Both the position numbers and the translations under genes were made by a program. A DNA stretch of 64,000 nucleotides from IMG/VR virus record IMGVR_UViG_3300038361_000164, positions 124,001 to 188,000 of that record. One strand, written 5' to 3'. Below the pieces are notes generated by a model. That model was not told where the DNA came from, made no database searches, and saw only the letters and a program-made list of their open reading frames with translations. Below are positions 35,467 to 63,912 of this stretch, in pieces. Position 1 is the stretch's first letter; every line of letters starts with the position of its first letter.

Positions 35467-36843
35467 ATGTCATTTAAAGTATATAGAGCAGTTGTGGTAG
35501 ATGTTGAGGAGTTACAGGATAACCCCAACATATTTAATATATTTGTACAAAAGATGTATGATTATAATGCTACTAAAAGAAAAGCGTTACCACCATCACC
35601 TATTGGAACAAGCAGTGTTGGTAGCGGATTTTTAAGTCGTCCAGAAATTAAGCAGGAATGTATGGTAGCTGAAGATGAGAATGAACCTATAGTTCAGATC
35701 CTAACATATACTACTACAAGATTTACAAACCCATTTGGTGGATTAACTGGTGGTGAAAAGATAGCACCAGGTGGATTTGCCATGAAGATTGGTGGAGCCA
35801 ATAAATCCGTACTCTCGATGGAGCCGGGTGGAGTATTTGGATTGTTTTCAAATGCGTGGGCACATATGGGACTATATGGGGAAAAAGGAGAATATAACTT
35901 AGTTGCTAAAACATTAGATCAGAGAACAAAGGTTGGAACTATTCTCGAAACATATAATCCTAGTGATAATAGATCCTCCTATGTATGACATCGAACACAG
36001 TTTATCGAACGCCCAATATTGGCAGACCATAAGAATAGCAGTGAGGCGTTACCAATATTTCCAAGCGTAGATCCTTTTGTAGGCCAGACCATTATTAGAT
36101 CTGGTACAATTAAGAATTTAGCCTTTCCAAATGATGAACCTTTAGAACATGTGTATGAATTGGAAACAAGGCAATCTAAAGTAAATAATACTAGGAAGGA
36201 TGTGTTCACTAAATTAAAACTGGGAATACAGAATAAACACAGACCTTTCACTAATACAGAGGAATATCCAGGTGGGACTATTTTTGAGTGGACACAGAAA
36301 CGCAGTGATCAAGGAGCTCGACTTGAACGATATGGGCTACTAGGTCCGAGTCGTGTAGAGTCTGGAGAATTATATAGACATAATGTTGTACACGGATTTG
36401 ATCATGTACTAAGAGAAGGGGAAGGATATGAGTATAACTTTCCAGATGAGAGAGCTACACATCAACTTATGGAGAGTTTTGGAACAATAAACGATGGATC
36501 TGTGTATAGAAAGAGAATACACGGACCAAATACTAGTGTGACGAAGGTTTTAGCTGATGATCAGTATAAAATAGATGTCAAAATAGGCGAAGCTGAGTAT
36601 AATTTAAAATTTACAGAGAATGGATTGACCATATCCACAAATGGTACTGATAAATATATAAAACTAGGCGGATCAGGGAATGAACTGGAGTTAGCTACAA
36701 AAGAATTTGTTGAAGATGTATATGATGCACATACACACGGTACCGGAGTAGGACCCAGTAGTCCTCCTTTATTAAACGCACAAGCACAAGCAATAGCAGG
36801 AGGGGCCAGTAACTATTTAACAACAGTAACTAAGTCAGACTAA
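35467..36843 (+). CDS. Baseplate hub/spike protein (gpV/gp5-like), 458 aa with TGA(35986)=Trp
   Basis: Track ORFs 35467-35988 and 36019-36843 are in one frame, split only by TGA; N-terminal OB-like strand (RAVVVDV), C-terminal HTH(G) spike-tip motif. Confidence 0.75.
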
Positions 36844-37361
36844 TGGATATTAATAATATTATAGCAGATGTGATGAATATCTTGGTAAGTCCAGACATAA
36901 ACCAAGATAATATAGCAGATGTATGGTGGAATATCATAGATAACGCTATAAATGACCTAACTTTCGTGTCTCCAACCACCGAACACGCCTTTTCTCCTAA
37001 TATTTTAACATATACAACAGCATTTCAAGCCTTTCCTGGTTATTTCCCAACATATAGTAATGTAGATATCGGATTGGTAGTGTTATCTCGTTTTTTCAGT
37101 GAGAAGCTATTTCCCTTAAATGCTGTAACAGTAACAGGTCTTCCAACACTATTTCACAGTACCGCAGTTGGGTTAGTCAGTATCATTAGTACCTCAGCTG
37201 TTCCTTGAGGAGTGCTTGACTTGAGTAATGAAAGCAGTTATGAAACAGCAGCAACTGTTTTGGGAAATGCCATATATACAATTATAACATCAGTAACAGT
37301 GGTTGCAACGGTCCTAGATTCGTCAGGAGCGTCATTTCTAGTTACATTGTCAGCAAATTAA
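36843..37361 (+). CDS. Putative virion structural protein, TGA(37206)=Trp
   Basis: Frame stays open 50 codons past TGA to TAA at 37359-37361, ending just before the next promoter. Confidence 0.7.
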
Positions 37362-37363
37362 GC

Positions 37364-37392
37364 TTGACCGTTTCTAGTGAACTTGTTATATT
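37364..37392 (+). promoter_or_regulatory. Sigma70-like promoter
   Basis: TTGACC-N17-TATATT. Confidence 0.7.
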
Positions 37393-37448
37393 AAACTAAA
37401 GCTAAAAATAATAGCAAACGCAGATTAAAAGCAGAATTGGAGTTTAAC

Positions 37449-39512
37449 ATGAATAAATTATTTAAAGATACACCGACAATAGAAAAACAAGGTTCCGGAA
37501 TCTATATGGACAAGGACAGCACGAAATGGGTACGTCAAGTGATTACTCACTTTGTTCAAATGTTCCCACAAGCAGAATCCTTACCTATTGCCGTATCTTG
37601 GACCAAAAAAGAAGACACTAAAGGATACGCAGTAGGCTCATTAAAAGCTGGGAATGCGTCAGTGCCTCTTATTATACGAGAATGGCGATTAGCTCCTATG
37701 GACACAATGATTGTGAATGATAAGCCATTACCTCTTACAACCGAAATGCTAAGTATGTTGATGATTAAGGCACAACCATTTAAAGGATTAGTGAATCATA
37801 ATAGAACTGGTATCGAAATGATGTTTGGTGGGATGCAAATGTCTCCTACAGGATATCCAACTCAAGACACATCAGAAGGTTTTAACAGACCAGCAAAGGT
37901 AGCTTCTTTTATTGAGAATCTATCATCTATAGATAAGAGAGTGGTTAAAGATCTTTTAGAAAAAGTAGCCGCAGATCAAAGCATTACATATGGATTTGTA
38001 CAGAATGAAACAACAGAGGTTCTTGATCGACTAGTGAAGAGTGCAACGAGTGTTGAATCTTCTCAAGAGGCATTTCTAAGGGATTTAGATGTAGACAGAC
38101 AATTAGTAGTGCAAGATCGCGAGGGTAACCATCATGTTAAGCAGGCATGTGCTGGGTTTGATCACACTTGGAGTAAGCAGATTCCATCTTCAGATGTAGA
38201 CAAGTTTCCTACATTATCCGCCAAGCTTCCAGAGATTGTGAAAGTAGGTGATGTTAAAGAGGAAAAAGTAATAGCACACAATAGTTCACCAGAGGCGGGC
38301 AAGATAGGCTGTTGGTATACTGAAGACGGCACTACAGAGCATTTTGAGATTACCGGCGTGACAAAAGTAGCTAATGAAGACAAATATAATATATATCAAA
38401 ATAATTCTAGATTCCTTTGTGTTGATGAAGACCAAAATTGGTTTGAACATGACTCAAGCGAGGTAAAGACTGCTGAAAACTTCAAAATAAACGGTGATTT
38501 CCCCAATATCGGCTCAAAAGGTGTGTTTGTACTTAGAAATCAAACTACACCTCAGTATGAATTGCGAAATATGACAAAAGAAGCTGGAAAATTCACAAAA
38601 ATCTCAGCATGGACTGGAACAGGTGTCCATTATTTGCATTTAACAGATAATGATAGTGATGAGTTTATAGTTGATGGCGTGGATGTATATTTACCAAAAA
38701 CAGCTAAGTTTATAGCTTTGAAGGATGAATTGAAGACTATTGCCATTGAAAAACAGGCAGAATTGGCTGAAAATGCCCATCGAACAGATAAAATAGCCTT
38801 TTTAACTGTGAATGGATTTAAACAGACAAAATATGTAGTTGGTGGCGATAAGTTAGAGAAAATAGCTGAAGATGTATATAGAATTCCAGAGGGAACACAG
38901 TTTCTAGAGGTTAGTCCTGAGAAAATAGCGGAAGTATTGCCTACTTACACAGACATTGCAACACATAGAATAGATAAAGACTCATACGGCTATTATTCGC
39001 TGAATGGGCCTGAGTTCTCTAAATATGCGGCACAAGGACACAAGATAAGAGATTTAAGTCATGCAGATGCTAAATGGGCTCTTATTTCATGTGATAGTAC
39101 TTTAGATGTGTTAGATAAAATAGCTGACGCTAAGTTTACAACATTAGACGTCAATAACGTTAAAGCTCCAGTACCTGTACAAGCTTACTTAGATAAGATT
39201 GCAGAGAAATATGAAAATGGATTAGAAGAGATATTTAATGTAGAAAAGACACATTTATTAAAGTGTGCAGCCTCATTGACAGATAAATCCACTGTTGATG
39301 CCATATTGTCACTAGGAGTGATTAATAAAAAGAATGCTGGCGAATTTATGGCCATGTTACCTTCATATGAGGCAGTTATGTCAGATTTGGCATCTTTGCT
39401 TATTATGTCTAGAGTAGGTATGAAGCAGGTTTCTGAATTAGCAATTAAAGAAGCAATGGAAGCCATAACAACAGTAGTATTAATGCTACAAAGATTGAAT
39501 GCAACAAACTAA
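37449..39512 (+). CDS. Large putative virion protein with repeated K-x-A motifs
   Basis: ORF track; GGAG upstream of ATG 37449; about 14 KxA motifs (EKIA, DKIA, EKVA, KTA). Confidence 0.75.
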   Translation: MNKLFKDTPTIEKQGSGIYMDKDSTKWVRQVITHFVQMFPQAESLPIAVSWTKKEDTKGYAVGSLKAGNASVPLIIREWRLAPMDTMIVNDKPLPLTTEMLSMLMIKAQPFKGLVNHNRTGIEMMFGGMQMSPTGYPTQDTSEGFNRPAKVASFIENLSSIDKRVVKDLLEKVAADQSITYGFVQNETTEVLDRLVKSATSVESSQEAFLRDLDVDRQLVVQDREGNHHVKQACAGFDHTWSKQIPSSDVDKFPTLSAKLPEIVKVGDVKEEKVIAHNSSPEAGKIGCWYTEDGTTEHFEITGVTKVANEDKYNIYQNNSRFLCVDEDQNWFEHDSSEVKTAENFKINGDFPNIGSKGVFVLRNQTTPQYELRNMTKEAGKFTKISAWTGTGVHYLHLTDNDSDEFIVDGVDVYLPKTAKFIALKDELKTIAIEKQAELAENAHRTDKIAFLTVNGFKQTKYVVGGDKLEKIAEDVYRIPEGTQFLEVSPEKIAEVLPTYTDIATHRIDKDSYGYYSLNGPEFSKYAAQGHKIRDLSHADAKWALISCDSTLDVLDKIADAKFTTLDVNNVKAPVPVQAYLDKIAEKYENGLEEIFNVEKTHLLKCAASLTDKSTVDAILSLGVINKKNAGEFMAMLPSYEAVMSDLASLLIMSRVGMKQVSELAIKEAMEAITTVVLMLQRLNATN

Positions 39513-39521: not shown

Positions 39522-39983
39522 ATGAAGATAATTAGACCACTAAGTGACAGAATTAGAGAAGCTAAAGCTAAGCAAGCTAGAAATGCTAAGCGAAAGATGA
39601 AAAAGAATATTACACCAAAGGCAGTAGAGCCTGATGAGGTAAATTCCAGTTTCATTGTAAATAAACATGATTATGAATATAACCATTCCCTTATAGCCGA
39701 GTTGGATGGTGTAACTGTAGGTCTTAGTGATAAGATATCGGCTGTAGTAGATGGAGTGTGTCGTGGCGTAGGTACTTGAATGATTTTTCCACCAACAGGT
39801 GAAAAGCTATTTCTTATCACATTATACTCCAATGATGAGTTCGGAGAGATTGATTATTCGTTTCTTTATCGTAACTCTGAAGAAGACACAATATATGAAT
39901 TGGACGAAACATTACCTTTGGATAAAGCCAATATGATTGTAGGTCATCCATATAGACCGTTTCAATTAACAATTAAAGACTAG
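39522..39983 (+). CDS. Hypothetical protein, TGA(39777)=Trp fuses two track ORFs
   Basis: TGA immediately followed by in-frame ATG; no SD before 39780. Confidence 0.6.
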
Positions 39984-40027: not shown

Positions 40028-40363
40028 ATGGTAGCAAACAGAGCTGGCAAGAATAAACAAGAATATCACTGGTGAACTCATGGGATTCAGGTGACAGCAG
40101 TAATAGTTTCGATAGTAATAGGATTAGTGGGATTTGCGAACAGTGCGTATGCGGTAAGTTATGGTGTAAAAGGAAACGCAGTAGCAATTGAGAAATTAAC
40201 AGAAAGAATAGAAACGAATGCGGAAGATATCGAACAGCTGAAGGAAGAAGATAACAAGATGAAGCTTGAGACATTGAAACAATTAAATCTTATTAGACTA
40301 TCTTTGACCGAAATAAAAGTTAAGATGGATATACCTATTTTACCCGAAACAGGAACAAATTAG
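40028..40363 (+). CDS. Holin/XhlA-like single-TM coiled-coil protein, TGA(40073)=Trp
   Basis: GGAGG upstream of ATG 40028; MVANRAGKNKQEYHW*THGIQVTAVIVSIVIGLVGFA then coiled coil. Confidence 0.55.
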
Positions 40364-41195: not shown

Positions 41196-41552
41196 TTACC
41201 GATTTAATCTCCAGTTCTGGAATTTCTCCCACAACCATTGTGCTCCCAATACTATAGAAGCTGCCAACATCACTGTTAGCATGAACCCAACTACCGTTGT
41301 TTCCATAATGATCTCCAATTAAGTATAGGAAGCGCTATTACAGCGCTCCCTATTAGTGACTGAGTGTTAGTCAGATGTGTTTGCTGCTTTCTTAGCCTTA
41401 CGAGCTTCATTCATCTCAACACCTTTATTCCAGGTGTATGTGCCAACTCTTTTAAGACCTTTACCAACCCAATAACCACCAGCAAGAATTCCTGCGGTTA
41501 GTAGATTGCTTCCAACTGCTTTACCATCGACTGAACCAAAAATATTCTTCAT
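41196..41552 (-). CDS. Two small membrane peptides (41196-41306, 36 aa; 41367-41552, 61 aa)
   Basis: GGAG SD sequences; downstream of promoter motif copy 5. Confidence 0.55.
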
Positions 41553-41619
41553 GTGTATCTCCTATTAAGGTTATGTGTATCAGTGCACGGCACGCCTTTG
41601 TGCTATACTACTGTACATC

Positions 41620-41630
41620 ATTCTTATACC
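41620..41630 (-). promoter_or_regulatory. GGTATAAGAAT motif (copy 5)
   Basis: Exact motif. Confidence 0.7.
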
Positions 41631-42016
41631 CTAAAATAGACGTAAAATAGTGGTAATGTCAGGTTAAAGCTGACCTTGGCACTATGAAAGGTACTTGTTT
41701 TAAACACGATCTTAAGTCATTGGGTCCTACTTCGACCCCCCACGGCGACCCTACCTCTCCGGCTGGTGTTTTGTATATATTATATTTTTTTTATTATTTT
41801 TTTTGAGCCCTATAGGGAACTTTTCTAGTATCGGTACGTTATAGAAGTATAGTTAAATAAATTTTATCATTATTTATTTGGTTAGTTGTTATTAAAAAAA
41901 TCCTCTTATTTTTCTAGGCACTTTCACTGGTGCCTAGTTTTTTTTAACCTAAAAAAATAATTAACCTAGAGAAAAGCGGTCGACCACCGCAATTCTCCTT
42001 TCTCACCGATTCAAAT

Positions 42017-42187
42017 CTAGTCTTCCCAAACTCCGTCCATATCGATGTCTAAAACGTTTTCACATTCACATCCATCTTCCGGGCAATCACATTCTTCATA
42101 ATTGTCATCACAAGTAGGACAGTCACATCCTTCACATTCACAATTTTCTTCACTTTCATAACATTCAAAACATTCCTTGTAACTCAT
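42017..42187 (-). CDS. Acidic Cys-rich 56-aa peptide (metallothionein-like)
   Basis: MSYKECFECYESEENCECEGCDCPTCDDNYEECDCPEDGCECENVLDIDMDGVWED; GAAAGGAAG upstream. Confidence 0.65.
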   Translation of the reverse strand: MSYKECFECYESEENCECEGCDCPTCDDNYEECDCPEDGCECENVLDIDMDGVWED

Positions 42188-42210
42188 ACTTCTTCCTTTC
42201 TTTCTTTCTT

Positions 42211-45200
42211 TTATTTTCCTAAAATCATGTCCAGTGTAGTCAGTAATATAGTATCGATGTTTGATAATTTATCCATAGATTTTCCCACTGATAAGGGTTC
42301 TTTTCTATATCTGTATAAATATGTTTTTACAGCAGTCGGACAATCTTCTGGAAGTATATCCGCACCGTGACAAAATACCCAATTGACATCTGAACGGCCC
42401 ATTTCACCCACCTCTACAAGATGGTGTCCACTATCATTGCTAGCAGCTGCTAAATGCTCTATAGGCATATATTCATCTTCACCCCAATGTTGTGTTTTAA
42501 AATCCAATAAGAATAGCTGAAACGGCCCAGGAAATCCATATCCAGTACATTCATAATCTTTGAATTTCGGCGGTCTTCCTATCATAAGCATTATCTCCTT
42601 TTATTTAAGAAAGCCGAGCTAGATCTCCAATAGAAACCCGTGCCCGACTCCCAAATCATCAGCTTTTATTTTATATTATATCTTTTATTTGATATGTAAT
42701 AGTTGTGTTTATTGGCATTTAACAACGCATAAAAACCTCCGTAGTTAATTATTTGTTCGCGTTATCGCAATTACTGTAGATAACTCTATACTATTCTTAT
42801 ACCATTTTTAACGTAAAAAAAGAGTTGGTACTAGGTGTAATACCCGCTCTTTTTTATTTTAATATGTCGGTTCTAACCTTTGCTTACTGCATAGGCTGGA
42901 CCTCCTTCCACCGCTATAACGGATTTTAAAAAGGATTTCATCATGAAGACTAAGTCATGTTTAATTTTTCTTTAAAACTATGTCAACTTTTTTACGTAGC
43001 CAATCCACCTGTTCGTCTATATTATCTAATCTTTCCAATAGCGAATCTTTCCATAATTTAGTCAAAGTAGAGTTGTTAGCACAGCTATCAGCAAAATGCG
43101 GCTTAACTATATCACATATATCAGCAATGTGGCCAAGACCAAAGTCTAACTCAACTGCTACTTCTTTTGAGACAGTTCCCGTATTCAATAATTCTGCTAT
43201 ATCTTTTTTTAGACCCATATAAGTGATTTCCAAAATAATTGTGTAGGCCTCTACTAAATTCATTTTTTGACGTTCAGTAAGTTCAGTAAGTTTCATACTT
43301 TTTCCTTTTCTTTCATTAATTGTAAAATTTTTGTACTAATTCGTCAAGTTCACTACGAGTTAAACTAAATGTAAGAATCACGTCCTTACAAGGTTCATAA
43401 CTACTAGTGCTATTTTTCTTTAATTTCATAGTCTGTGTTAATTGAATTTGTATACTTAGGTCTCTTAGATAATATGCTTGAAGATTTCCGGAGACTATAG
43501 TATCACCAAAACCTCTAGACATTAGCCAGAATCTCAAGTCAGGATCAAAGTGCACATGGACAACGTGAGTATGGTCAGGATTACCTGTTAAAATCTTTAA
43601 CACTACTTCTTTAAAAGCTCTAGTGCTTATATCAATGTATGGACGTGTGTCCATCCTCAAGAATTGACCATTATCTATCCAAGCGATAAAGTGTTTTATC
43701 ATATGTTTCCTTTCTAATTATTTATAAATGTTTTTCATCTCTACTGTTCTTATACCATTTTTAACTTAAAAAAAGGGATACGAATACCCCTTTTAATATC
43801 TAAAACAATAGGTTATTTTTTCTCTCAACTAACTTTATCGCTAGTCACATATTCCGGAGGCAAGCCCATAGCAAGTTCCATATCATCTTGCACTTTCTCT
43901 CCCTCTTTTATCGTTTTCTTCAATTTAATGAGTCTAGGTTCCGGCGGATATATTCCAGCATGATCAGGATGTATTTGTGCACATCTTCTCACTTCCATAG
44001 TGACAGGATTTAGCAAAGGTTTGAAATCTACGTGTAGTGTCCCCATTCTATCCCACTGAGCTATCTTACCTAACAACTTAGCACAACCTAAACAAAACAT
44101 AATATTTTGCCCACGGTTTCTCGTTGAGTAAGTATAAATGAGAGCATCTACATCTTTTTTCAACTTCGTGTCACAGCCTCTACAGAAGCAATCCCTTTTC
44201 GCAAGTCTTTTCGTAAACTCCCCACTCATGGGTTACCTTCCTCAACATAATTACAACCAGCCTCAACACATCTTCTTGGATGTGGTTGATCCATACTTTT
44301 ACTGAAACAATGCACATGATCTTCAAGTATGCGTATAAACCCTCCGTCAAGCTCATGTGGAGGATCTTTGATAGGTTCGTCAGCTAGAAGCGCACCAACA
44401 TCTCCATTAGTAACTGCGTAACTCAGCATATCAAAGCGCGTCCGTATTTTGACTAACGCAGCTCTTAACTGCATTATATGATTGTATGCCGCATCATCTA
44501 TTGTATGTTCATTTCCATTTATTTTAATCTTCTTCATTATTTCTCCTCTTGCATAATAAAATGAGTTTCCACTGCTATACTTAGATAACCCTTGTCCACT
44601 TTCACATCCATTTTGTCAACACTGTCATTTAAAGCGGCAATTATATCTTCATGGAGTTTCTTATGCAGTTGTTCTGGATCATACTTTCCAAATCTAATGT
44701 CACACTCATTGCGTAACACTACGCTTTTTATTGTTTTCTTCATTTGATTTCCTCCATAACTTCTCCGTCTCTTAAAGCTTTAACCTTATCAATAGTCTCA
44801 ATAAGATCCTGTTTCCATTTCTTATAGGCTTTCACCAAACCAATTACCGCTCCTTCCATGTCAAAGTCTCCAAACATCCAACTAGCGAGTATTACAGCCA
44901 AAGTAAATCCACCCAGTATACCACCCATTACTAAAGGAAATAATAAAACGAATAAACCATGTTTTATTCCAAATATTAAACTTACCAGTGTAAAAAGCAC
45001 AGACAAAACAGCTATTAACTTTGTTACCTAAGAACTATCTACTATAGTCCATATTATTTTTAATGTATTATTCATAACACTCCTTTTTTTACTTTTGTCT
45101 AATATCGTTTTGAATTGTTCTTTGTTCGACTTTGTTACAAATATCACAAGCTCTTTGTTGTGTTACCCACGTTCCAATCTCTTTATCTTCCACGTTTTCA

Positions 45201-46240: not shown

Positions 46241-46259
46241 AATACTTTTTCCTTTTTAT

Positions 46260-52557: not shown

Positions 52558-52613
52558 ACTCTATCTCCTTTTTTGTGAATTAAATTGAAGGAGTCGAACC
52601 TTCATATACCAGT

Positions 52614-52624
52614 ATTCTTATACC
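52614..52624 (-). promoter_or_regulatory. GGTATAAGAAT motif (copy 9)
   Basis: Exact motif. Confidence 0.7.
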
Positions 52625-52727
52625 AAATTACAGGAGATTCTTAAGGTAAAAAGAAGAACCAAAGTCCTTCCTTTTTTAGACATAACCCACCCAATGGACG
52701 GGGATCGACTTCAATCAAACTGTCTAT

Positions 52728-53486: not shown

Positions 53487-53536
53487 TCTTTATCTTCCTT
53501 TCTTTTTTTTTGATAATTAAGATTTGATTACATACT

Positions 53537-53547
53537 ATTCTTATACC
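53537..53547 (-). promoter_or_regulatory. GGTATAAGAAT motif (copy 10)
   Basis: Exact motif after terminator-like hairpin at about 53558-53590. Confidence 0.7.
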
Positions 53548-53599
53548 AATTTTAAGCTAAAAAAAGAGAAGGGGGTCCGTCTCTTTTTCCTTACTACTA

Positions 53600-55435: not shown

Positions 55436-55735
55436 ATGGACAAATCTACATATGTTTTCGAAAAGCTGGCGAATAAACTAAACAATAAACCACAATGAGT
55501 TAAGGACCTTGTTCCTGGAGCTGCATCTGGAGTGGTCACTAGTTTAATGTTTCACCCATTAGATACGTTACAAGTGTTGAGACAAACAGAGAAAAAAATG
55601 CCTAACGTAACTTTAAAAAGATTGTATAAAGGGGTAGGATTAAAATTGTTAAAGCAAGTACCTACTATGGCAGTAGGCTACGGTGTGTACGGTGCTACAA
55701 AACGATATGTGGAAAATAAGTCTTCGGTTACTTAA
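55436..55735 (+). CDS. Single-repeat mitochondrial-carrier (Solcar)-like protein with DK..Y.FEKLA leader, TGA(55496)=Trp
   Basis: W.KDLVPGAASGVVTSLMFHPLDTLQVLRQ...LYKGVGLKLLKQVPTMAVGYGVYGATKRYV. Confidence 0.7.
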
Positions 55736-56386: not shown

Positions 56387-57706
56387 ATGGCAATCGGAAT
56401 TCCGGATATCAAAATGTTTCGGGCTTTTCCGACTGTAAACAGTCCTCAAAAGGGAACTTTTAATATACAACTACATGAAGCGGATCGTGCAGGAAGACAT
56501 TACGACATTCGTATTGTTCTTCCTGGATCTTCTCATGCGTATTCCTGAGCTGCCAGAAAACTCCCAACATCTGGACAGAAGGTAATGGCCATCGAACAAC
56601 CAACTCACACGGAAAGCTATGTGGGTTGGTCTGGTACTATATCAAAAGGATATGGGAAAGGGACAGTGCGCTCAATTGTTAAAGAGCCAATCGAAGTCCT
56701 AGAAGCTACAGTAAATAAAGTTGTTTTTAACATATACACAGGAAACTCGGCAACTCGCTATCTACTAAAAAGAACTGGTGCGAAAGAATGGTTATGATAT
56801 AACTATACTCTTACCACAGATAATACCGCAATACCTACCAAAAAACCTTCCTATAAAGAAATAGAGTTCTCAGCCCTTACAACTCTAAATAAAGAAGAAG
56901 TACATTCTCCTAAATTAGACGGAGCACATAATATAATTCGATTGCGACCAGAAAAACGGATAGATATTTATTCTTATAGAAAAAGTAAAAAAGGAAAAGA
57001 GAGAATAGATCATACATATAAAACAGATTTGTATAAAATAAGATCGCCAAAAGAATTTGGTGACTCGGTTATTAGAGGTGAATTATATGTTCCCGGAAAA
57101 ACTTCTACGGAAACTGGATCTATTTTAAACTCGAACGTATGAAAAGCTAGAAAGAAACAACAAGAATCAAACAACTCTTTAGATATTAGGATTTATAATA
57201 TTGACACTTACAAAGGAAAAGATGTAAGCAAGAAACCTTATAGAGAAAAACTTTTAATGTTACAAGAGATTAGTCGTCGAATTCCTCAACTTAAAATGAT
57301 GGAATTAGCGCGTACACAAGGCGAAAAGTTAAAACTAATAGACCAGATCAAACACAAAAAACATAAGGAAACGGAGGAGGGAATTGTTGTATTTAATCTC
57401 AATAACCCTACACCTGTCAAAGCTAAAATAGCATCAGACTATGATGTGCTTATTACAGGAACATTTCCAGCAAAGCCTGGAACTAAATATCACGGAAACG
57501 CTATCGGCGGTTTTTTGGGACGACCAGAGAACAGTAACATTATTATTAGAATAGGTAGCGGCTTAACAGATCAGATTAGAAGAAGTGCTTATACTAATCC
57601 TGAAAAATACGCAGGACAGTGAGCAAAAGTAAAAGCTAACTCTAAATTAAAGAGTGGCAAATACCGTCATCCAAGATTTATTGAATGACGTTATGAAAAA
57701 TTTTAA
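56387..57706 (+). CDS. LigD-type 3'-phosphoesterase fused to ATP-dependent DNA ligase (439 aa; five TGA=Trp)
   Basis: H.....HYDIR, S*A (SWA), H...Y, GYGKG; ligase KLDG, RGELY, EEGIVV, GSG, RHPRFIE*R. Confidence 0.88.
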
Positions 57707-58301: not shown

Positions 58302-58928
58302 ATGGAATATAAACACCACGCATTAAAAACTTCAGTAGTAGGATTATCTGGCGCAGCCGATATTTTAATACCAGGACCTGTAGAAACTATACTTGCTGGG
58401 GCCTTGGCTCCAAAGGGTAAAAAGGTTAGAGCAAGCACTCTAGCCACAGCGGATTCAACTATAGGTTCTGTTCCTGGCTATACTGCGTTGGCTATTGCTA
58501 GTAAAGCTCCATTAAAAAAATGATTCAAGAAACAAGAAGGATTTAAAAGTGGAGTGAAAAATGCTTTTAGCTCTTTACGAAAACTTAAAGCGAAACAACT
58601 TTATAAAACATATAAAGGACCTCTTGCTTTATTAGGAATAGGAAGTGCTTTAGGAAGTGCGTATGGATATAATCGTGCTATAAAACAAGCAGAGTATGAC
58701 CCAACTTTAGAACGACAACTTCCTGGCTGAGATAATCATCTTCTCCAAGGAAGAAAAAGACTTCTCAATACTTCTAAGAAGCTATCAAGTGAATCTATTC
58801 GCGCGTTAGGTGACGAATGAATTTTTAGAAAACCACCTAAGGGCGTGCGTAAATTTGGATACACAGGACATATCTCTAAAAAAGCAGAAACAGTGTTCAA
58901 TAAAGTAAAGGAATGGCATAATGAATAA
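58302..58928 (+). CDS. Basic protein with Gly-rich hydrophobic segments (208 aa; three TGA=Trp)
   Basis: Frame open through TGA 58521, 58728, 58818 to TAA 58926-58928. Confidence 0.7.
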
Positions 58929-59988
58929 ATCAGAATATATTTTCACTAAAATTGCAAAAGAAAAATTAATGGATCTTTGAGCCAAACAAAATGTGCCAAT
59001 AGGCATGACAACCAAACAATGAAATGATGATTATAATTCTCAATGATATGATTATAGTGCAAAAAAGAAATCTACAGGTAGTAAATCTTTAATGGCTTTT
59101 GATAAAGAATATCGTTCTATGCATAAATATAACTTCACTGCAGCAGATCAAAAAAAATATGTAAGTCAATCGAGAAAACGAGCATTACTTACTGTAGGCA
59201 CTTTAGGTGCTGTAGGTGCTTTAGGAGGCTATTTGGTGACTAAAAAATTTAAAAAATTTGCCACAATAGGATCCACAAGAGGTGCAGCAATAGGAGCGGC
59301 AACCCTTGGAGGATTATCTGCCCTTTCGCAAGGAGCGCATGTACGCGGATCTTTTAAAGATTGACAAAAAAGTAATAAAAATAAATCTTTTAAAGCATAT
59401 ACAAAATCAGAACGTGGAAAAGGAACTATAAATCCTGCTTTAAAAGAAGTGGGGAGTAATTTTATGTGAGGAGGCTTATCTGGGGCTTACTTAGGTACTG
59501 GGTTTAGAAGAGCAACAAGTTATAAAGGCTATAAAGGCTATAAAGGCTATAAAGCTTCTACACATTCAGTAGATAGCTTATTAAAAACTTTTGGAGGAAC
59601 TAAAGGACAGTTCAAGACTAAAAAAGATGTAAACATGGCTTGAAGAAGTGCGGCTAAAAAATATCATCCAGATAGAAATCCAGGCAATATAAAAGCCGAA
59701 GCTAAAATGAAAAATATAAACAATGCGTATACAGAAGTAAAAACAACTGACTGGTTTAGCAAGCTTGCCGCGTTATATAAAGTAAGTGGGTCCATGGGTC
59801 AGAAAAGGTTAAATAGATTAGGAGGGCACACAGTTAAACAACTTCAGGCGCTAACCAAAGCAATGAAGGCCGGAAAATTGACTCCTAAGGAAGGAGGAGC
59901 TTTACATGCGAAGATAATGAGAAAACTTCATCCGACACTTCAAAAAATAAATTATAAACTTCAAAAAGGAATAGATAAACTTCCATAA
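58921..59988 (+). CDS. Leader + glycine-zipper + J-domain protein (355 aa; six TGA=Trp)
   Basis: MNKSEYIFTKIA; A*RSAAKKYHPDRNPGN..AEAKMKNINNAY (HPD motif). Confidence 0.82.
59521..59556 (+). repeat. (TATAAAGGC)3 tandem repeat encoding YKGYKGYKGYKA
   Basis: Directly visible, in frame, upstream of the J-domain. Confidence 0.9.
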
Positions 59989-59993: not shown

Positions 59994-61394
59994 ATGGATA
60001 AGGCCCTTTTCATATTTGAAAAATTAGCAGCTGACCAGTCGCATCAAGCTAGAGTTCTAAAAAAGCTTGAAAAGACTAATAGGCTTTTGCTATACCATGG
60101 ATTGGGTTCAGGAAAAACGTACACAGCGCTTCGAGCAGGTGAGAAATTTAAACAACATATCACAGCAGTAGGTCCAGCAGCGCTTAAAGGCAACTTTCCT
60201 AAAGAGAAGCAGAAACATAACATAAAAGGCACCTTAAAATATTTTTCATATAATAAGCCTCCTACAAAGGACGTGTCTAAAAATATAGTAGTATTTGACG
60301 AAGCACACAGAATGGGTAGAGTGGAATCACAGCGTTCACATTATCCAGATAAAATAAAAGGTAGCAAAACATTGTTCTTAACAGGAACACCAATTAGAAA
60401 TGAACCAGCGGAATTAATACCTATTTTAAGAGGATTAGATATTCCAGTTGGAAGAGATAAAAAAAGATTTAATCAGGCATTTGTTCAAGAAATAAGACAA
60501 AAACCTGGATTCTTTGCTAGAGTATTTAAAGGGGTAAAACCAGGAACAATTAAGCGAGGCAAAAATTTAGGCATACTATCAAGAGCACTAAAAGGCAAGG
60601 TGGATTATCATGCTCCACAGACAAATAAAGATTATCCCTCAGTTAAAACTCAGCGAATCGAAACTGTTATGTCAGAGCGACAACAATCTACCTATAACAT
60701 GGTAATGAAAGAACATGCCGATTTGCGCTATAAAATTAGACACGGTATTGCGCCGTCTAAAACAGAGTCATCTCGTATGAATGCGTTTTTAACAGCAGCC
60801 AGACAGGTATCCAATCGTCCGGGCAAATATAATTTAAGCGCTACAGAAGCTGACGCGCCCAAGATAAACGCCGCATTCGACGAAATAAAGAGACGCCACA
60901 AAAAGAACAAAAGATATAGAGGTGTAACATACTCCACATATCTTGGGCACGGTATCGACCCAATGGCTAAAAGATTGAGTAGAACTAAGATCCCATTTGC
61001 ATCTTTCACAGGTAGACTTAATGATAAGGAAAAATCTAATATTATTAAAAAGTATAATACTGGAAAAATTAAACACCTACTTATTTCTGGCGCAGGCGCA
61101 GAAGGTTTAGATTTAAAAGGCACAAGATTATTACAGATAATGGAACCTCACTGGAACGAGCCGATGTTAAAACAAATTAAGGGTAGAGTGAAACGATTTA
61201 AATCTCATACACATTTACCGAAAAAAGAGCGCAATATAACAATTCAGACGTATATTAATAAACCACGTAAAACACGTTGGTTGAAAAAACAGCATAGCGG
61301 TACAGATGAATATCTAGAACTACTATCTAAAAACAAACAAAATCTTGTAAGCGATTTTACTAACGTATTAAAGAGGGTTGGAAGTGCAAAGTAA
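59994..61394 (+). CDS. SNF2-like superfamily 2 helicase with leader
   Basis: MDKALFIFEKLA; GLGSGKT, DEAH, TGTP, GAEGLDL, QIKGRVKR. Confidence 0.88.
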   Translation: MDKALFIFEKLAADQSHQARVLKKLEKTNRLLLYHGLGSGKTYTALRAGEKFKQHITAVGPAALKGNFPKEKQKHNIKGTLKYFSYNKPPTKDVSKNIVVFDEAHRMGRVESQRSHYPDKIKGSKTLFLTGTPIRNEPAELIPILRGLDIPVGRDKKRFNQAFVQEIRQKPGFFARVFKGVKPGTIKRGKNLGILSRALKGKVDYHAPQTNKDYPSVKTQRIETVMSERQQSTYNMVMKEHADLRYKIRHGIAPSKTESSRMNAFLTAARQVSNRPGKYNLSATEADAPKINAAFDEIKRRHKKNKRYRGVTYSTYLGHGIDPMAKRLSRTKIPFASFTGRLNDKEKSNIIKKYNTGKIKHLLISGAGAEGLDLKGTRLLQIMEPHWNEPMLKQIKGRVKRFKSHTHLPKKERNITIQTYINKPRKTRWLKKQHSGTDEYLELLSKNKQNLVSDFTNVLKRVGSAK

Positions 61395-61905
61395 AGCAGA
61401 AATATTATTTGAGAAATTAGCCACTAAATTGGGTTTTATGAGGAAGGGGTTTTTTTCCCACACAACAAGTAGAAGCGCTTTATCGAATATTCTATCTTCA
61501 GGTAAAATAAAAACAGGCAGATCATTAGGAAAAGCAGGACAAGGTTTTAGAAACATGGATGATATGGTTCCTGACAGTTTTAATGAGTATGTAAGTACTG
61601 GAAAAAATACTATCTATACCTCTGGAAAAAGATTTAGAGCTATATTAATGAAATCTCCGAAAAATGAAGTAAGTAATTTAGGAAAAGAATCTTTACTTAA
61701 AGGAGATGTCGCATTAAGTTTAAAAAATACACGAGTCGCAGTACCAGCTAACAGACTTTCAGGTTACCAAAAAAAGTATCCTAAGTATAAATTTATAGCA
61801 TCTGAAGATATAAAAACTAAAAGAATAACAAAGTACCAACCAAATAAAGAAGTACAGGAAGGTATCAACTGGGGTGAATTAAACCAAGCATTTGGTAATT
61901 ATTAA
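61384..61905 (+). CDS. Basic protein with leader; possible ADP-ribosyltransferase fold
   Basis: (V)QSKAEILFEKLA; FSHTTS..AL..ILSSGKI resembles the HxT/IL..G strand of DarT/Tpt1-like ARTs. Confidence 0.6.
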   Translation: MQSKAEILFEKLATKLGFMRKGFFSHTTSRSALSNILSSGKIKTGRSLGKAGQGFRNMDDMVPDSFNEYVSTGKNTIYTSGKRFRAILMKSPKNEVSNLGKESLLKGDVALSLKNTRVAVPANRLSGYQKKYPKYKFIASEDIKTKRITKYQPNKEVQEGINWGELNQAFGNY

Positions 61906-61912
61906 AATAGAT

Positions 61913-62851
61913 ATGGCAGATAACCCTTCAATAGTAGATCATTTTAGATACGGTAAGCGTCTTGTTAGACACAAGTATTTCATGCTTGGCCCAGGAAGAC
62001 AGTTAGGGGTGCCATACAGCACACTTCTTGCCCACGACCTGTCAAAGTTTAGACCAAGTGAATGGGGCTCTTATGTGAAGTATTGGCACGGTCCAAAAGG
62101 TATAACTGGGACAAGAGATCCAGAAGTATATAGAAAATTTAGAGAAGCGGCATCGCTTCACTACAAACGAAATCCACATCACGGTCATAAGATCAACGTG
62201 GAACAAAAGCGTAAGCATCAATTAGAAGCAGTAACAGATTGGTATGCAACAACGAAAGCGAATCAGCCTAGTGCTAAAAACTTTCCTAGCTTTGGCACAT
62301 GGGTCAGAAAACATAATTCGACTGCTAGAAAGAAATTAATGGAACTAGGAGTAGACACGGAGAAATTAGCAATGCAAGATAAAGCAACATACGTATTTGA
62401 GAAGCTAGCAGGAGCCAAATGATCGCCCCTTTCACCATATAAATTTAATAAGTTTATACGTAATCGTTTTGGAGAGAAGCTTCTGCTAAAGTCATTTGAA
62501 ACTTCTAACAAACTTTGACCTCAGGATGTTAATACTTTACATGCCTATAAAACTTTTAAACGTATGGTAGCAGATGTTAATAATGTTAGAACGATTAAAG
62601 ATGCTAGAAAAGTAAATAAAACTTGATCAGACAATGTATGAAGGAAAAATCAAGACTTGGTAGCCCCAGGAAGAAGAAACAGCATAGAAGAGGTATTAAT
62701 GGAAAGAACATTAATTACTCCTCTCGGGAAGAAAGAAGGCTTACCTATTAATAGGAATGTATTAACAACGAAGTTAGAGAAAAACATACCCTCTAAACTT
62801 CAGAAACAATCTTTAAGACTTATATTTAATAATAAATATAGTAAAAATTAA
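61913..62851 (+). CDS. DUF5662-like HD domain fused to a second leader-bearing domain (four TGA=Trp)
   Basis: HK...HDLSK...E...H..RNPHH...DW; internal EKLAMQDKATYVFEKLA; open through TGA 62420, 62516, 62624, 62639. Confidence 0.7.
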
Positions 62852-62867
62852 ATAAAGGACTATAACA

Positions 62868-63365
62868 ATGAAAGATAAAGCACAAATAATATTTGAAAAG
62901 ATAGCGAAGAAGGATATAATATCCTATTTACCGTTTACTAAAAAAAGACGTCAGAAAAACAGGGAAGCTTGGGTAAGAGAAACTCCTAAAGGTAAGAATT
63001 TTTCACGTAAAGTATTAGTGGCATATGTAGCAAAACACATGCGAAAAGGGGGGAGAAAAGTAGCAATTCACCCTAAAAACCGCCTAACTGTGCAACAAGT
63101 ACGAGCTGCAAAACGTTCAGGCTCTCATTATAGCCAAGGAAGTTATAAACATGCAAGTAAAAAACAAGCAGCATACAGTAGTTTGAAAAAAGTAAAAGGA
63201 ATAGGATTGCCCGAATTAGACAAGTTAGTTAGCAAGATTAATATAACAAGTAAAAAATATTCCAAGGAAGGCAAAAAACTAATACCATTGCTAAATCGTA
63301 AAAACAAGGCCTCAGTTAATAGAATTAGAATGCGTAAGAATTTAGAAAAACGTTACCAAAAATAA
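62868..63365 (+). CDS. Highly basic protein with leader
   Basis: MKDKAQIIFEKIA; AAGGA upstream. Confidence 0.75.
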   Translation: MKDKAQIIFEKIAKKDIISYLPFTKKRRQKNREAWVRETPKGKNFSRKVLVAYVAKHMRKGGRKVAIHPKNRLTVQQVRAAKRSGSHYSQGSYKHASKKQAAYSSLKKVKGIGLPELDKLVSKINITSKKYSKEGKKLIPLLNRKNKASVNRIRMRKNLEKRYQK

Positions 63366-63366
63366 A

Positions 63367-63606
63367 ATGTATTTAGCAATAGAACACTCAGGAACAAACA
63401 CCGGCTTAGATGCCGCAGAAAAGATACAACAATTTGCAGAAAACGAATTTGGCGCGAGTTGTGACCAAGTTGTTGGAAGTACAGAAAAAAGCGAAGTTAT
63501 TGTATATAACGAAGATCAAGAAATAGTAGGAATTTTTGGGGAGAACCCGACAGAAGATACCATGCGTTTTACATTAGCCATGGCATATGACGAGGAGGAC
63601 AATTAA
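63367..63606 (+). CDS. Small acidic hypothetical protein
   Basis: ORF track. Confidence 0.6.
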   Translation: MYLAIEHSGTNTGLDAAEKIQQFAENEFGASCDQVVGSTEKSEVIVYNEDQEIVGIFGENPTEDTMRFTLAMAYDEEDN

Positions 63607-63912
63607 ATGGGAAACCAAATCACATACGGATCATTAGAACCTGGAGCACAAGAACGTGCTTATGAGTTTTTAGTGAACGAAGAAATCAATCAAGACTCTA
63701 TGAATAAACTTGCACTTGACACAGACGTAGGAGCTGAAAAAACTTTTATAAAACTAGCTGAAGAGTGAAAACCAAAAACTTTTACTGAGTTTGCTGAAAA
63801 GGTTGACGAAACATTTGAAGGTAAATTAAATGAAAAGCTTGCCAGATGGGAAAAGAAACTAGTACTCGATCGCAGCCTAATTAAAGAGTTATTTATAAAT
63901 GACACTGCCTAA
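63607..63912 (+). CDS. Acidic protein with KLA motifs (101 aa; TGA(63766)=Trp); absent from ORF track
   Basis: GAGGA upstream; MGNQITYG...NKLA...IKLAEE*KPK...EKLARW. Confidence 0.65.

What the first reader, a model, noticed from the sequence alone, without database searches (positions are those of the whole stretch)
35467..63912. Strand-partitioned genetic code: TGA=Trp in plus-strand (late) genes, TGA=stop in minus-strand genes
Seen: 24 in-frame TGA codons in 10 plus-strand genes (35986, 37206, 39777, 40073, 55496, 56546, 56795, 57140, 57620, 57686, 58521, 58728, 58818, 58978, 59020, 59044, 59362, 59467, 59641, 62420, 62516, 62624, 62639, 63766). These genes have no other interruptions and end in TAA/TAG. 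TGA falls where family motifs expect Trp or an aromatic: LigD-PE S*A=SWA, ligase RFIE*R, J-domain A*R. Minus-strand genes use TGA as a true stop in ATGA overlaps (23597, 28163, 44226, 44740, 45863) and TGATG (32644). Established: stop-codon recoding concentrated in late/lysis genes is reported in phages of standard-code hosts, mostly TAG, with some TGA. Inference: the code switch times late gene expression. No TCA suppressor tRNA lies in this window.
Basis: partly seen in the sequence, partly recalled or inferred. Interest (0 to 1): 0.85.

Follow-up and report, generated by a model that had tools for sequence, protein, structure and literature searches.

The report
Phage reads TGA as tryptophan late
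This window comes from an uncultured 210-kb phage that reads the stop codon TGA as tryptophan in many virion, packaging and lysis genes but keeps TGA as a stop in its early-type genes. The pattern is real, but this kind of recoding is already known from other phages.

Summary
All 24 in-frame TGAs lie at the stated coordinates in 10 plus-strand genes, and two independent assemblies reproduce the 20 TGAs at 55.4-63.9 kb that they cover. Orthologues run colinearly across them. In 149 aligned cells at TGA columns (window genes, right-flank genes and the endolysin), relatives show Trp(TGG) 57 times, TGA 15, Phe or Leu 32 and Gly once. Relatives' TGAs fall on this phage's TGG. So TGA codes for Trp. 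The 102 minus-strand genes of the window have 209 TGG, no internal TGA and 16 terminal TGAs, 10 of them in ATGA overlaps.

The "strand-partitioned" reading holds only inside the window. I walked 89% of the source contig (IMGVR_UViG_3300038361_000164). Six consecutive minus-strand sugar-modification genes elsewhere carry 33 in-frame TGAs. Several plus-strand genes (major head protein, protease, a 1506-aa glycosyltransferase with 32 TGG) carry none. Recoding therefore follows gene sets, not strand.

No canonical tRNA(UCA), RF1 or TrpRS was found. The 26-tRNA array holds tRNA-Trp(CCA) and, oddly, an amber suppressor (CUA). A weak non-canonical tRNA-like element with a UCA anticodon lies just upstream of the endolysin.

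This is a new member of a known kind (TGA-to-Trp recoded phages). The timing role is plausible but untested.

The parts
35467..36843 (+). Gene gA, 458 aa, function unknown, one sense TGA at 35986
   Evidence: About 30 homologues of 400-650 aa align in single HSPs that run across the TGA (E down to 1e-43). Both halves therefore belong to one protein. The column is variable. There is no Shine-Dalgarno motif before the next possible start at 36019.
36843..37361 (+). Gene gB, 172 aa, one sense TGA at 37206
   Evidence: The orthologue in L016 aligns over residues 10-172 and has TGA at the same column. The window's TGG in 'VWWN' aligns with a TGA in L016.
37437..39512 (+). Gene gC, 691 aa, TGA-free plus-strand gene (8 TGG, 0 TGA)
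   Evidence: Its only relative is P0122 at 51% identity.
39522..39983 (+). Gene gD, 153 aa, one sense TGA at 39777, immediately followed by ATG
   Evidence: The orthologue in L019 aligns over residues 7-152 at 62% identity and has TGG (Trp) at the TGA column. This is one gene, not two.
40028..40363 (+). Gene gE, 111 aa, membrane protein with weak holin/spanin-like matches, TGA at 40073 (codon 16)
   Evidence: A strong AAGGGAGGA Shine-Dalgarno motif precedes the ATG at 40028. None precedes the alternative GTG at 40091. PHROG matches are weak. No orthologue was found, so this TGA is the least secure of the 24.
55436..55735 (+). Small protein with a mitochondrial-carrier-like repeat and the N-terminal MDK..FEK.A tag, TGA at 55496
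   Evidence: Orthologues in L011 and L019 align across the TGA, which falls on Ile or Leu. The L011 orthologue carries PF00153 Mito_carr.
56387..57706 (+). LigD-type phosphoesterase plus ATP-dependent DNA ligase fusion, 439 aa, five sense TGAs (56546, 56795, 57140, 57620, 57686)
   Evidence: The L011 orthologue is 71% identical and colinear over all 439 residues. At 56546, relatives show Trp in 13 of 16, TGA in 2 and Phe in 1. At 57620, Trp in 5 and TGA in 5. At 56795, Trp or Phe. At 57686, mostly Phe, Leu or Ile. There is a weak Pfam DNA_ligase_A_M match.
58302..58928 (+). Gene of 208 aa with three sense TGAs (58521, 58728, 58818)
   Evidence: Against the L011 orthologue (51% identity) the three columns read TGA, Trp and TGA. 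In L019 they read Asn, TGA and Val.
58921..59988 (+). J-domain protein, 355 aa, six sense TGAs (58978, 59020, 59044, 59362, 59467, 59641), N-terminal tag
   Evidence: The Pfam DnaJ match starts at profile position 22 on the first residue after TGA 59641. The TGA therefore sits at profile position 21, which I recall to be the conserved Tyr (position; residue identity from my knowledge of PF00226). TGA 59020 aligns with Trp in L019.
59994..61394 (+). SNF2-family helicase, 466 aa, TGA-free, N-terminal tag
   Evidence: Pfam SNF2-rel_dom and Helicase_C. There are 793 relatives, the closest at 80% identity. It served as the anchor for fetching related loci.
61892..62851 (+). DUF5662-type protein, 319 aa, four sense TGAs (62420, 62516, 62624, 62639), with an internal copy of the tag motif
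   Evidence: Orthologues in L017 and L019 are 69% identical and in L011 56%. Two of the window's TGG codons align with TGA in L011.
63607..63912 (+). Gene of 101 aa, one sense TGA at 63766
   Evidence: The L019 orthologue (56% identity) has Trp at the TGA column.
823..35371 (-). Minus-strand block of early-type genes. No internal TGA. TGA is used as a stop.
   Evidence: Functions found: RNA ligase, PNKP, NAD synthase, PP2C phosphatase, kinase-like protein, two SPFH proteins and a metallophosphatase. The TGA stops at 23597 and 28163 lie in ATGA overlaps and the one at 32644 in a TGATG.
41367..54481 (-). Second minus-strand block of small genes. No internal TGA. TGA is used as a stop.
   Evidence: ATGA overlaps at 44226, 44740 and 45863. 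Read-through extensions would be 3-25 codons long.
1479..7126 (-). Eight tRNA genes, the right-hand end of a 26-tRNA array that continues left of the window
   Evidence: ARAGORN finds Ile, Tyr, Thr, Pro, Glu, Asp and two Gly. The rest of the array is in L002 and L008. It includes Trp(CCA) and a CUA suppressor but no UCA.

Best explanation
The window is bases 124,001-188,000 of a 210,263-bp contig from an uncultured tailed phage. The phage uses two readings of TGA.

Shown:
- In a subset of genes TGA is a sense codon for tryptophan. It makes up about 40% of Trp codons in plus-strand genes across the covered genome.
- This subset includes the large terminase, tail-size structural genes, the endolysin, the tagged proteins at 55-64 kb and a sugar-modification cluster.
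- In the early-type genes (tRNA array, NAD salvage, RNA repair, kinase and phosphatase, primase and exonuclease) TGA never occurs internally and serves as a stop.
- Inside the window this split coincides with strand. Genome-wide it follows gene sets.

Inferred:
- The host uses the standard code. Early genes are translated with TGA as stop.
- Later a TGA decoder accumulates and outcompetes release factor 2. Only then can the TGA-bearing genes be translated in full.
- TGG and TGA then interchange freely in genes needed only at that stage.
- Genes needed early, needed in very large amounts (head protein, scaffold, protease) or recently acquired stay TGA-free.

The decoder is not identified. The best candidate is a non-canonical tRNA-like element with a UCA anticodon, 122 bases upstream of... 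more exactly, inside the 122-base gap upstream of the endolysin gene. Alternatives are a canonical tRNA(UCA) in the unread 11% of the contig, or the phage's own tRNA-Trp(CCA), whose anticodon stem is unusually weak.
For: - Positions and statistics.
- Independent assemblies are identical, including the 20 TGAs they cover.
- Orthologues are colinear across TGAs, and TGG and TGA interchange in both directions.
- Pooled cells at TGA columns (+ 58 + 97; window genes, right-flank genes and the endolysin): Trp 57, TGA 15, Phe 16, Leu 16, Met 8, Tyr 6, Gly 1, out of 149.
- gA is one protein in about 30 homologues.
- Trp frequency in plus-strand genes is 0.61% counting TGG alone and 1.14% counting TGA too, against 1.54% in minus-strand genes.
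- Late functions on the TGA-bearing strand: terminase with 14 TGAs, protease and major head protein; holin and endolysin; structural genes of 557-1803 aa with 6-14 TGAs each.
- TGA as stop in early-type genes.
- Candidate decoder: an Rfam tRNA match of 30.5 bits (gathering score 29) at L136:18261-18317, with anticodon arm CAGGA-CUUCAAA-UCCUG. It is the only perfect arm of this type in 187 kb and it is intergenic. The standard-code relative L204 has the endolysin orthologue but no such element.
- Published precedent: bioRxiv 10.1101/2021.08.26.457843.
Against: - No canonical tRNA(UCA), RF1 or TrpRS was found in the 89% of the contig read. Pfam listings covered only part of the ORFs.
- The UCA element has a poor acceptor stem (4-5 of 7 pairs) and no GG in its D loop. 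Its fold z-score is only -1.75. No homologue was found in other loci.
- One perfect anticodon-type arm per anticodon is about what chance gives in this sequence.
- The only suppressor tRNA seen reads TAG, not TGA.
- Timing is an inference from gene function alone. TGA-free and TGA-rich genes are interleaved within single same-strand arrays. A pure transcription-unit or timing model does not predict that.
- The host and its genetic code are unknown.
Confidence: 0.85

Rival explanations
1. Neutral drift rather than regulation. Once an efficient TGA decoder is present during the later part of infection, TGG and TGA interchange freely in any gene translated only then. The pattern would be a by-product of when genes are translated and not a device that times them.
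For: TGG and TGA swap in both directions between close relatives. TGA-rich and TGA-free genes are interleaved on the same strand. A relative with 67% identical Volactin shows no internal TGA over the 13 kb read. There is no codon-context difference between sense TGA and TGG.
Against: It does not explain why the decoder is kept at all, nor why the endolysin and terminase carry TGAs. It is not exclusive of a timing role.
Confidence: 0.35
2. The code is truly set by strand: plus-strand genes use code 4 and minus-strand genes use code 11.
For: The correlation is perfect within the 64-kb window. It also holds for the tRNA, tmRNA and thymidylate-synthase region to the left.
Against: Six consecutive minus-strand genes at contig 19,663-26,771 carry 33 in-frame TGAs. 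Four consecutive pieces of the DegT aminotransferase, separated by TGAs, map colinearly onto the Pfam profile. Plus-strand genes with 32, 8 and 7 TGG carry no TGA.
Confidence: 0.04
3. The host itself uses code 4 (for example a mollicute), so TGA means Trp throughout and the early genes merely happen to lack it.
For: TGA aligns with Trp. No UCA tRNA is needed if the host supplies one.
Against: Over the 89% of the contig read, minus-strand genes outside the 6-gene sugar cluster use roughly 380 TGG codons and no internal TGA (my subtraction; in the window alone, 209 TGG and 0 internal TGA). All of their TGAs sit at gene ends, and 10 of 16 in the window lie in ATGA start-stop overlaps. A 210-kb phage with 26 tRNAs and Shine-Dalgarno-led genes is an unlikely mollicute phage.
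Confidence: 0.03
4. TGA codes for glycine (code 25, phages of Absconditabacteria or Gracilibacteria) or for selenocysteine.
For: Both are known alternative meanings of TGA.
Against: Gly appears in 1 of 149 aligned cells, against Trp in 57. Cys does not appear in those columns at all. Fourteen TGAs in one terminase gene is not a selenoprotein pattern.
Confidence: 0.01
5. The TGAs are artefacts: assembly errors, pseudogenes or adjacent short genes.
For: Standard gene callers split these genes into pieces.
Against: Independent assemblies give identical sequence for the 20 TGAs they cover. All 24 interruptions are TGA and none is TAA or TAG. Orthologues continue in frame. The amidase domain starts before the first possible start codon that follows a TGA.
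Confidence: 0.01

Closest known systems
TGA-to-Trp recoded gut phages: Agate (about 127 kb) and Jade (Borges et al., bioRxiv 10.1101/2021.08.26.457843, read)
   Same: In-frame TGA aligns with Trp. Recoded codons sit in structural and lysis genes and not in the replication machinery. The early genes are readable in the standard code. Close relatives differ in code. A suppressor tRNA is detected in only about 35% of such genomes.
   Different: This phage is a 210-kb environmental lineage with no GenBank relative at the DNA level. Relatives were recovered from many JGI and ENA metagenome projects; their habitats were not looked up. No RF1/TrpRS/tRNA(UCA) operon like that of Jade was found. The only clear suppressor tRNA reads TAG. 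A non-structural sugar-modification cluster is also recoded. The most abundant head proteins avoid TGA.
crAss-like phages with block-wise TAG or TGA reassignment, and dual-code gene callers such as MgCod (from my own knowledge; crAss TAG recoding is validated in PMC9523058, listed)
   Same: One genome holds blocks that must be read in different codes, with late blocks recoded.
   Different: Those cases are mostly TAG to Gln with a matching CUA suppressor. Here the recoded codon is TGA, while the suppressor seen is CUA.
Jumbo phages with alternative codes (PMC13037316)
   Same: In that survey 3.6% of jumbo phages use alternative codes. Recoding is absent from most of the genome and concentrated in hallmark genes. 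Not all of these phages have a suppressor tRNA.
   Different: That survey assigned TGA to Gly by gene-caller score. Here homologue columns show Trp.
Phages of code-4 hosts (Mycoplasma and Spiroplasma phages)
   Same: TGA means Trp.
   Different: In those phages all genes use TGA as a sense codon and none uses it as a stop. Here about two thirds of genes avoid it internally and use it as a stop.

Membership tests
Alternatively coded phage, TGA to Trp, with standard-code early genes | In-frame TGA in otherwise intact, conserved genes, with no in-frame TAA or TAG | tested here: met
   24 TGAs in 10 genes of the window and 140 in 44 of 80 plus-strand genes over 187 kb.
Alternatively coded phage, TGA to Trp, with standard-code early genes | TGA columns align with Trp in homologues | tested here: met
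   Trp in 57 of 149 cells, TGA in 15, Gly in 1. Relatives' TGAs fall on this phage's TGG 9 times.
Alternatively coded phage, TGA to Trp, with standard-code early genes | Recoded codon concentrated in structural, packaging and lysis genes and absent from early and replication genes | tested here: met
   Terminase has 14 TGAs, the endolysin at least 1 and the large structural genes 6-14 each. Primase, exonuclease, the tRNA-array genes, NAD genes and RNA-repair genes have none. Exceptions: a recoded sugar-modification cluster, and TGA-free head genes.
Alternatively coded phage, TGA to Trp, with standard-code early genes | Phage-encoded suppressor tRNA with anticodon UCA | tested here: inconclusive
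   ARAGORN finds none in 89% of the contig. There is one weak Rfam tRNA match with a UCA loop at L136:18261-18317, which has a defective acceptor stem. The remaining 11% of the contig was not read.
Alternatively coded phage, TGA to Trp, with standard-code early genes | Accessory code-change genes (RF1, TrpRS). These are optional and reported in only two Jade genomes. | tested here: inconclusive
   None appears in the Pfam listings, nor in my scans. Many ORFs were not scanned.
Alternatively coded phage, TGA to Trp, with standard-code early genes | The host uses the standard code | not testable with these tools
   The host is unknown. Indirect evidence: the early genes use TGA as a stop and TGG as their only Trp codon.
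Alternatively coded phage, TGA to Trp, with standard-code early genes | Trp found at TGA positions in peptides | not testable with these tools
   This needs metaproteomics of the source samples.
Phage of a code-4 host | TGA is a sense codon in all gene classes and is never used as a stop | tested here: not met
   There are 16 TGA stops among the 102 minus-strand genes of the window, 10 of them in ATGA overlaps, and no internal TGA in 13,576 codons.
Code 25 phage (TGA = Gly) | TGA columns dominated by Gly | tested here: not met
   Gly in 1 of 149 cells.
Canonical tRNA (for the UCA element) | A 7-bp acceptor stem, a D loop with GG, a T loop of TTCRANY type, a 5-bp anticodon stem and a 7-nt loop with U33 and a purine at 37 | tested here: inconclusive
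   The anticodon arm is perfect and D and T stems are present. The acceptor stem has only 4-5 of 7 pairs, the D loop lacks GG and the T loop has C at position 57.

The most novel reading that the evidence does not exclude
TGA is decoded here without a canonical suppressor tRNA. One possibility is the odd tRNA-like UCA element embedded in the lysis cassette, which would be made together with the late transcripts and so switch the code by itself. Another is the phage's tRNA-Trp(CCA), whose weakened anticodon stem (G27-U43 and an A31-C39 mismatch) might allow C-A wobble. Meanwhile the phage also carries an amber suppressor for a codon it does not recode.
Probability: 0.25. Interest if true: 0.65.

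Novelty: new member of a known kind. Interest (0 to 1): 0.4.

Why it matters
The window shows clearly that one phage genome has to be read in two codes. A standard gene caller splits the ligase, terminase, endolysin and tail genes into fragments. The wider walk shows that strand is only a local proxy for the code, so dual-code annotation should work gene by gene. The case also highlights an open question for recoded phages, namely what actually decodes the stop codon. Here a 26-tRNA array holds a suppressor for the wrong stop codon, and the only UCA candidate is non-canonical. If that element or the unusual tRNA-Trp proves to be the decoder, it would explain why suppressor tRNAs go undetected in most TGA-recoded phages.

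Tried and rejected
- Megablast of 48 kb of the window against GenBank phages found nothing.
- IMG/VR scans with gC and with the ligase returned only the source contig.
- I looked for orthologues of the 16 TGA-terminated minus-strand genes in related loci, to compare their ends. None was present.
- I first read the elements at L008:16260-16920 as circularly permuted tRNA genes that might supply a UCA anticodon. Rfam matches them to Y RNA-like YrlA tRNA mimics and none gives a UCA loop. I dropped the idea as a decoder.
- The base after sense TGAs does not differ from the base after TGG (p = 0.07) or after terminal TGAs (p = 0.29).
- The distance from a TGA stop to the next in-frame TAA or TAG (mean about 9 codons) is not shorter than chance (my estimate), so there is no sign of selected back-up stops.
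- TAG is not a sense codon. There is no in-frame TAG in the window's plus-strand genes. ORFs bounded by TAA and TAG already cover 89% of 187 kb. The terminase's TAG is followed by a second stop 16 codons later.
- No RF1 or TrpRS appeared in the ORFs scanned. No Ro60/TROVE protein lies next to the YrlA-like array.
- nhmmer, blastn and Rfam found no copy of the UCA element in 2.5 Mb of related loci. Those loci rarely include a lysis cassette.
Full report
**What the window is.** A scan of IMG/VR with the 691-aa product of 37437-39512 returned only IMGVR_UViG_3300038361_000164, a 210,263-bp contig. The coordinates of that hit and of a second one place the window at contig bases 124,001-188,000. 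The same sequence occurs in at least six other assemblies from JGI, ENA and Logan. Megablast against GenBank phages finds nothing. The nearest cultured phages match at 34-41% protein identity for the head protease: Vibrio phages D69, D181 and D148, and Salmonella phage Arash. G+C is about 36%, and the base skews follow the coding strand.

**Check of the observation.** With only TAA and TAG as stops, the plus strand at 35.4-41.1 kb and 55.4-63.9 kb is tiled by ORFs.
- None contains an in-frame TAA or TAG. Among out-of-frame triplets of the same genes, TAA (442) and TAG (261) outnumber TGA (209).
- The 19 plus-strand genes have 28 TGG and 24 TGA and end in TAA (17) or TAG (2), never in TGA.
- The 102 minus-strand genes have 209 TGG, no internal TGA and 16 TGA stops.
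- Counting TGA as Trp raises the Trp content of plus-strand genes from 0.61% to 1.14%. Minus-strand genes have 1.54%.
- Loci L014 and L015, from two other samples, are identical to the window over 11,133 bases, including all 20 TGAs of the right-hand block. The four TGAs at 35.4-40.4 kb are not covered by those assemblies.

**TGA is a sense codon and means Trp.**
- The closest relative, L011, has a helicase 73% identical to the window's. Its ligase orthologue is 71% identical and colinear over all 439 residues. The window's five TGAs face TGA, Trp, Trp, Trp and Phe.
- In 58302-58928 the three TGAs face TGA, Trp and TGA. In 61892-62851 two of the window's TGG codons face TGA in L011.
- The orthologue of 36843-37361 in L016 has TGA at the same column and a second TGA where the window has TGG.
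- One metagenome scan with a helicase alignment returned 80 related loci. Against them, the cells aligned to window TGAs are Trp 27, TGA 12, Phe 13, Leu 13, Met 8 and Gly 1, out of 97.
- The S-TGA-A column of the phosphoesterase domain is Trp in 13 of 16 relatives.
- TGA 39777 is followed directly by ATG and could have been a gene boundary. It faces Trp in an orthologue that is 62% identical over 149 residues, so 39522-39983 is one gene.
- For the genes just right of the window, including a terminase with 14 TGAs, the count is Trp 29 of 51. The endolysin's TGA faces Trp in L204.
- For 35467-36843, about 30 homologues of 400-650 aa align in single stretches across the TGA. It is therefore one gene, and the column is variable.
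- The J-domain match begins at profile position 22 on the residue after TGA 59641. That puts the TGA at profile position 21, which I recall to be the conserved Tyr.
- TGA 40073 has no orthologue. A strong Shine-Dalgarno motif before the ATG at 40028, and none before the alternative start, favours it being internal.

**TGA is a stop in the minus-strand genes of the window.** Under code 4 every minus-strand TGA falls in the last 1-25 codons of its ORF or in an over-extended 5' end. If TGA made up the same share of Trp codons as on the plus strand, about 180 internal TGAs would be expected in these genes. None is seen. I could not compare gene ends with orthologues, because none was present in the related loci.

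**Beyond the window the split is by gene set, not by strand.** The overlapping pieces agree without conflict.

Right of the window (plus strand):
- the large terminase, with an intein-like insert, has 9 TGG and 14 TGA;
- the head protease, acidic scaffold-like proteins and major head protein are all TGA-free;
- a 1506-aa multi-domain glycosyltransferase, deacetylase and methyltransferase has 32 TGG and no TGA.

Left of the window:
- the tRNA array, tmRNA, UDG, thymidylate synthase and ClpP lie on the minus strand and are TGA-free;
- PhoH and a fused 2354-aa RNA polymerase lie on the plus strand, with one TGA each;
- a 42-kb plus-strand block of large structural genes has 79 TGAs against 74 TGG;
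- that block also holds a holin (0 TGA) and an Amidase_2 endolysin, whose domain begins before the first start codon that follows a TGA;
- a minus-strand replication block is TGA-free. It holds a helicase, peptide deformylase, CCA-adding enzyme, AEP primase and exonuclease;
- on that same minus strand, six consecutive sugar-modification genes at 19,663-26,771 carry 33 in-frame TGAs. TGA-free genes are interleaved among them.

Four consecutive pieces of the DegT aminotransferase, separated by TGAs, match profile positions 39-87, 93-159, 163-198 and 202-255. Among plus-strand genes with at least six Trp codons, the TGA share differs strongly between genes (chi-square p = 4e-9). A relative binned with a Bacteroidales MAG (L204, Volactin 67% identical) shows no internal TGA over the 13 kb read. 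The code therefore varies within the clade.

**What decodes TGA.** ARAGORN finds 26 tRNAs in one array plus a tmRNA.
- The array includes tRNA-Trp(CCA) and a well-formed tRNA with anticodon CUA, an amber suppressor. It has no UCA tRNA.
- No tRNA was found by ARAGORN anywhere else in the 187 kb.
- The tRNA-Trp has an unusual anticodon arm, with G27-U43 and an A31-C39 mismatch. The tRNA-Trp of relative L019 is canonical.
- Rfam adds one match at its gathering level: L136:18261-18317, 30.5 bits, model positions 8-63. It has a D hairpin, a perfect anticodon arm CAGGA-CUUCAAA-UCCUG (anticodon UCA) and a T hairpin.
- That element lies in the 122-base gap between the preceding gene and the endolysin's in-frame ATG. 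It is the only perfect arm of that type in 187 kb. However, about one such arm per anticodon is expected by chance.
- Its acceptor stem is poor and its D loop lacks GG. L204 has the endolysin orthologue directly after the preceding gene, without such an element. I rate it a candidate only.
- No RF1 or TrpRS was seen in the ORFs with Pfam information.
- A terminase with 14 TGAs needs efficient decoding. At 80% read-through per codon only about 4% of chains would finish (my arithmetic). Simple leakiness therefore cannot explain it.

**How it most likely works.** Shown: dual use of TGA, its meaning as Trp, and the gene classes involved. Inferred: the host uses the standard code, the early genes are translated with TGA as stop, and a decoder that appears later allows full-length translation of TGA-bearing genes. 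This is the model of Borges et al.. The TGA-free state of the most abundant head proteins suggests that TGA decoding is costly. The mosaic of TGA-rich and TGA-free neighbours fits drift between TGG and TGA in genes that tolerate it at least as well as it fits a designed timer. Timing was not tested.

**Comparison with what is known.**
- TGA-to-Trp recoding limited to structural and lysis genes, absence from replication genes, close relatives with different codes, and missing suppressor tRNAs in about 65% of such genomes are all published for gut phages.
- Alternative codes in jumbo phages, concentrated in hallmark genes, are also published.
- This phage is a new, distant lineage showing the same phenomenon. 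What is less usual: the suppressor tRNA does not match the recoded codon, the UCA candidate is non-canonical, a minus-strand metabolic cluster is recoded, and head genes avoid TGA.

**Side observations.** These are listed under Noticed in passing. The main ones:
- An N-terminal motif (M-D-K-A-E-F/Y-I/V-F-E-K-I/L-A) is shared by eight proteins at 55.4-63.4 kb and conserved in relatives. It resembles a capsid-targeting or propeptide signal with a T4-type L/I-x-E cleavage site. That resemblance is from my own knowledge and was not tested.
- An array of eight cassettes left of the window holds Y RNA-like tRNA mimics (family described in PMC4201824).

Noticed in passing
window 55436-63400 (+): N-termini of the genes starting at 55436, 55896, 57720, 58921, 59994, about 61390 and 62868, and internally at about 62380. 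One further copy at contig 79.2 kb.: A conserved 12-residue motif, M-D-K-A-E-(F/Y)-(I/V)-F-E-K-(I/L)-A, heads eight otherwise unrelated proteins: a carrier-like protein, a J-domain protein, the SNF2 helicase, basic proteins and others. It occurs 9 times on the plus strand of 187 kb and never in the three reverse-strand frames. It is kept in relatives L011 and L017. It resembles a capsid-targeting or propeptide tag with a T4-type L/I-x-E protease site, which would make these proteins virion-packaged and ejected. That resemblance is from memory and untested.
   Followed up: partly
L008:16160-17740 (source contig about 110.0-111.6 kb, left of the window, minus strand): A gene-free 1.7-kb gap in the tRNA array holds eight cassettes framed by GGCTAT-N7-CTTCCTTCTA and GATTTCCAAACA. 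Three payloads have a T arm and 3' acceptor strand, a UUCG loop, then a 5' acceptor strand and D arm. After re-permutation ARAGORN folds them as cloverleaves. Rfam matches them to Y RNA-like YrlA tRNA mimics at 24-43 bits (E from 9e-8 to 0.03), below the gathering score of 69. No Ro60/TROVE gene was detected beside them. Two further odd tRNA-like matches lie at 16087-16154 and 17554-17634.
   Followed up: partly
L008:12325-12399 (contig about 115.4 kb): A well-formed tRNA with anticodon CUA (amber suppressor) sits in a phage that shows no in-frame TAG in any gene examined. About 18% of its genes end in TAG.
   Followed up: partly
L136:18253-18328 (contig about 76,161-76,236, plus strand): A tRNA-like element with anticodon loop CUUCAAA (UCA) lies in the gap between a small gene and the Amidase_2 endolysin, just downstream of the holin. 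The Rfam tRNA match is 30.5 bits. The acceptor stem is defective.
   Followed up: yes
L008:18393-18468: The phage tRNA-Trp(CCA) has a G27-U43 pair and an A31-C39 mismatch in its anticodon stem. The tRNA-Trp of the related contig in L019 is canonical.
   Followed up: partly
L009:13097-13477: A phage-encoded tmRNA with tag peptide GKTQFALAA (Rfam 88.8 bits).
   Followed up: no
L014:13061-15736 (contig 189,928-192,603): The large terminase carries an insert of about 365 residues (roughly residues 150-513) that most relatives lack. It looks like an intein or homing-endonuclease insert and holds many of the gene's 14 TGAs.
   Followed up: no
L130:4895-11959 (contig 92,296-99,360): A single 2354-aa ORF joins beta-type and beta-prime-type RNA polymerase domains (Rpb2_6, Rpb1_1, Rpb1_2, Rpb1_5). 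In relatives L012 and L013 the same domains are split over 4-6 ORFs, in one case with an intein.
   Followed up: no
window 20472-23209 (-), 2003-2458 (-), and L002:12556-13719: NAD-salvage and RNA-repair genes cluster with the tRNAs: NAD synthase, NAPRTase, NADAR, T4 Rnl1-type RNA ligase and PNKP. Elsewhere on the contig are a CCA-adding enzyme and a peptide deformylase (L196).
   Followed up: no
window 7758-10690 and 14609-16505 (-): A kinase-like protein of 578 aa lies next to a PP2C phosphatase. There is also a tandem pair of SPFH/Band 7 proteins.
   Followed up: no
L131:19466-20512 (-) and L135:19592-20512 (-): The phage encodes an actin-like Volactin-family protein (Pfam E = 1.6e-65) and a 306-aa protein with a reverse-transcriptase (RVT_1) match.
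   Followed up: no
window 55436-55735 (+) and L011:911-1204: A 100-aa phage protein carries one mitochondrial-carrier-type repeat (PF00153 on the L011 orthologue).
   Followed up: no
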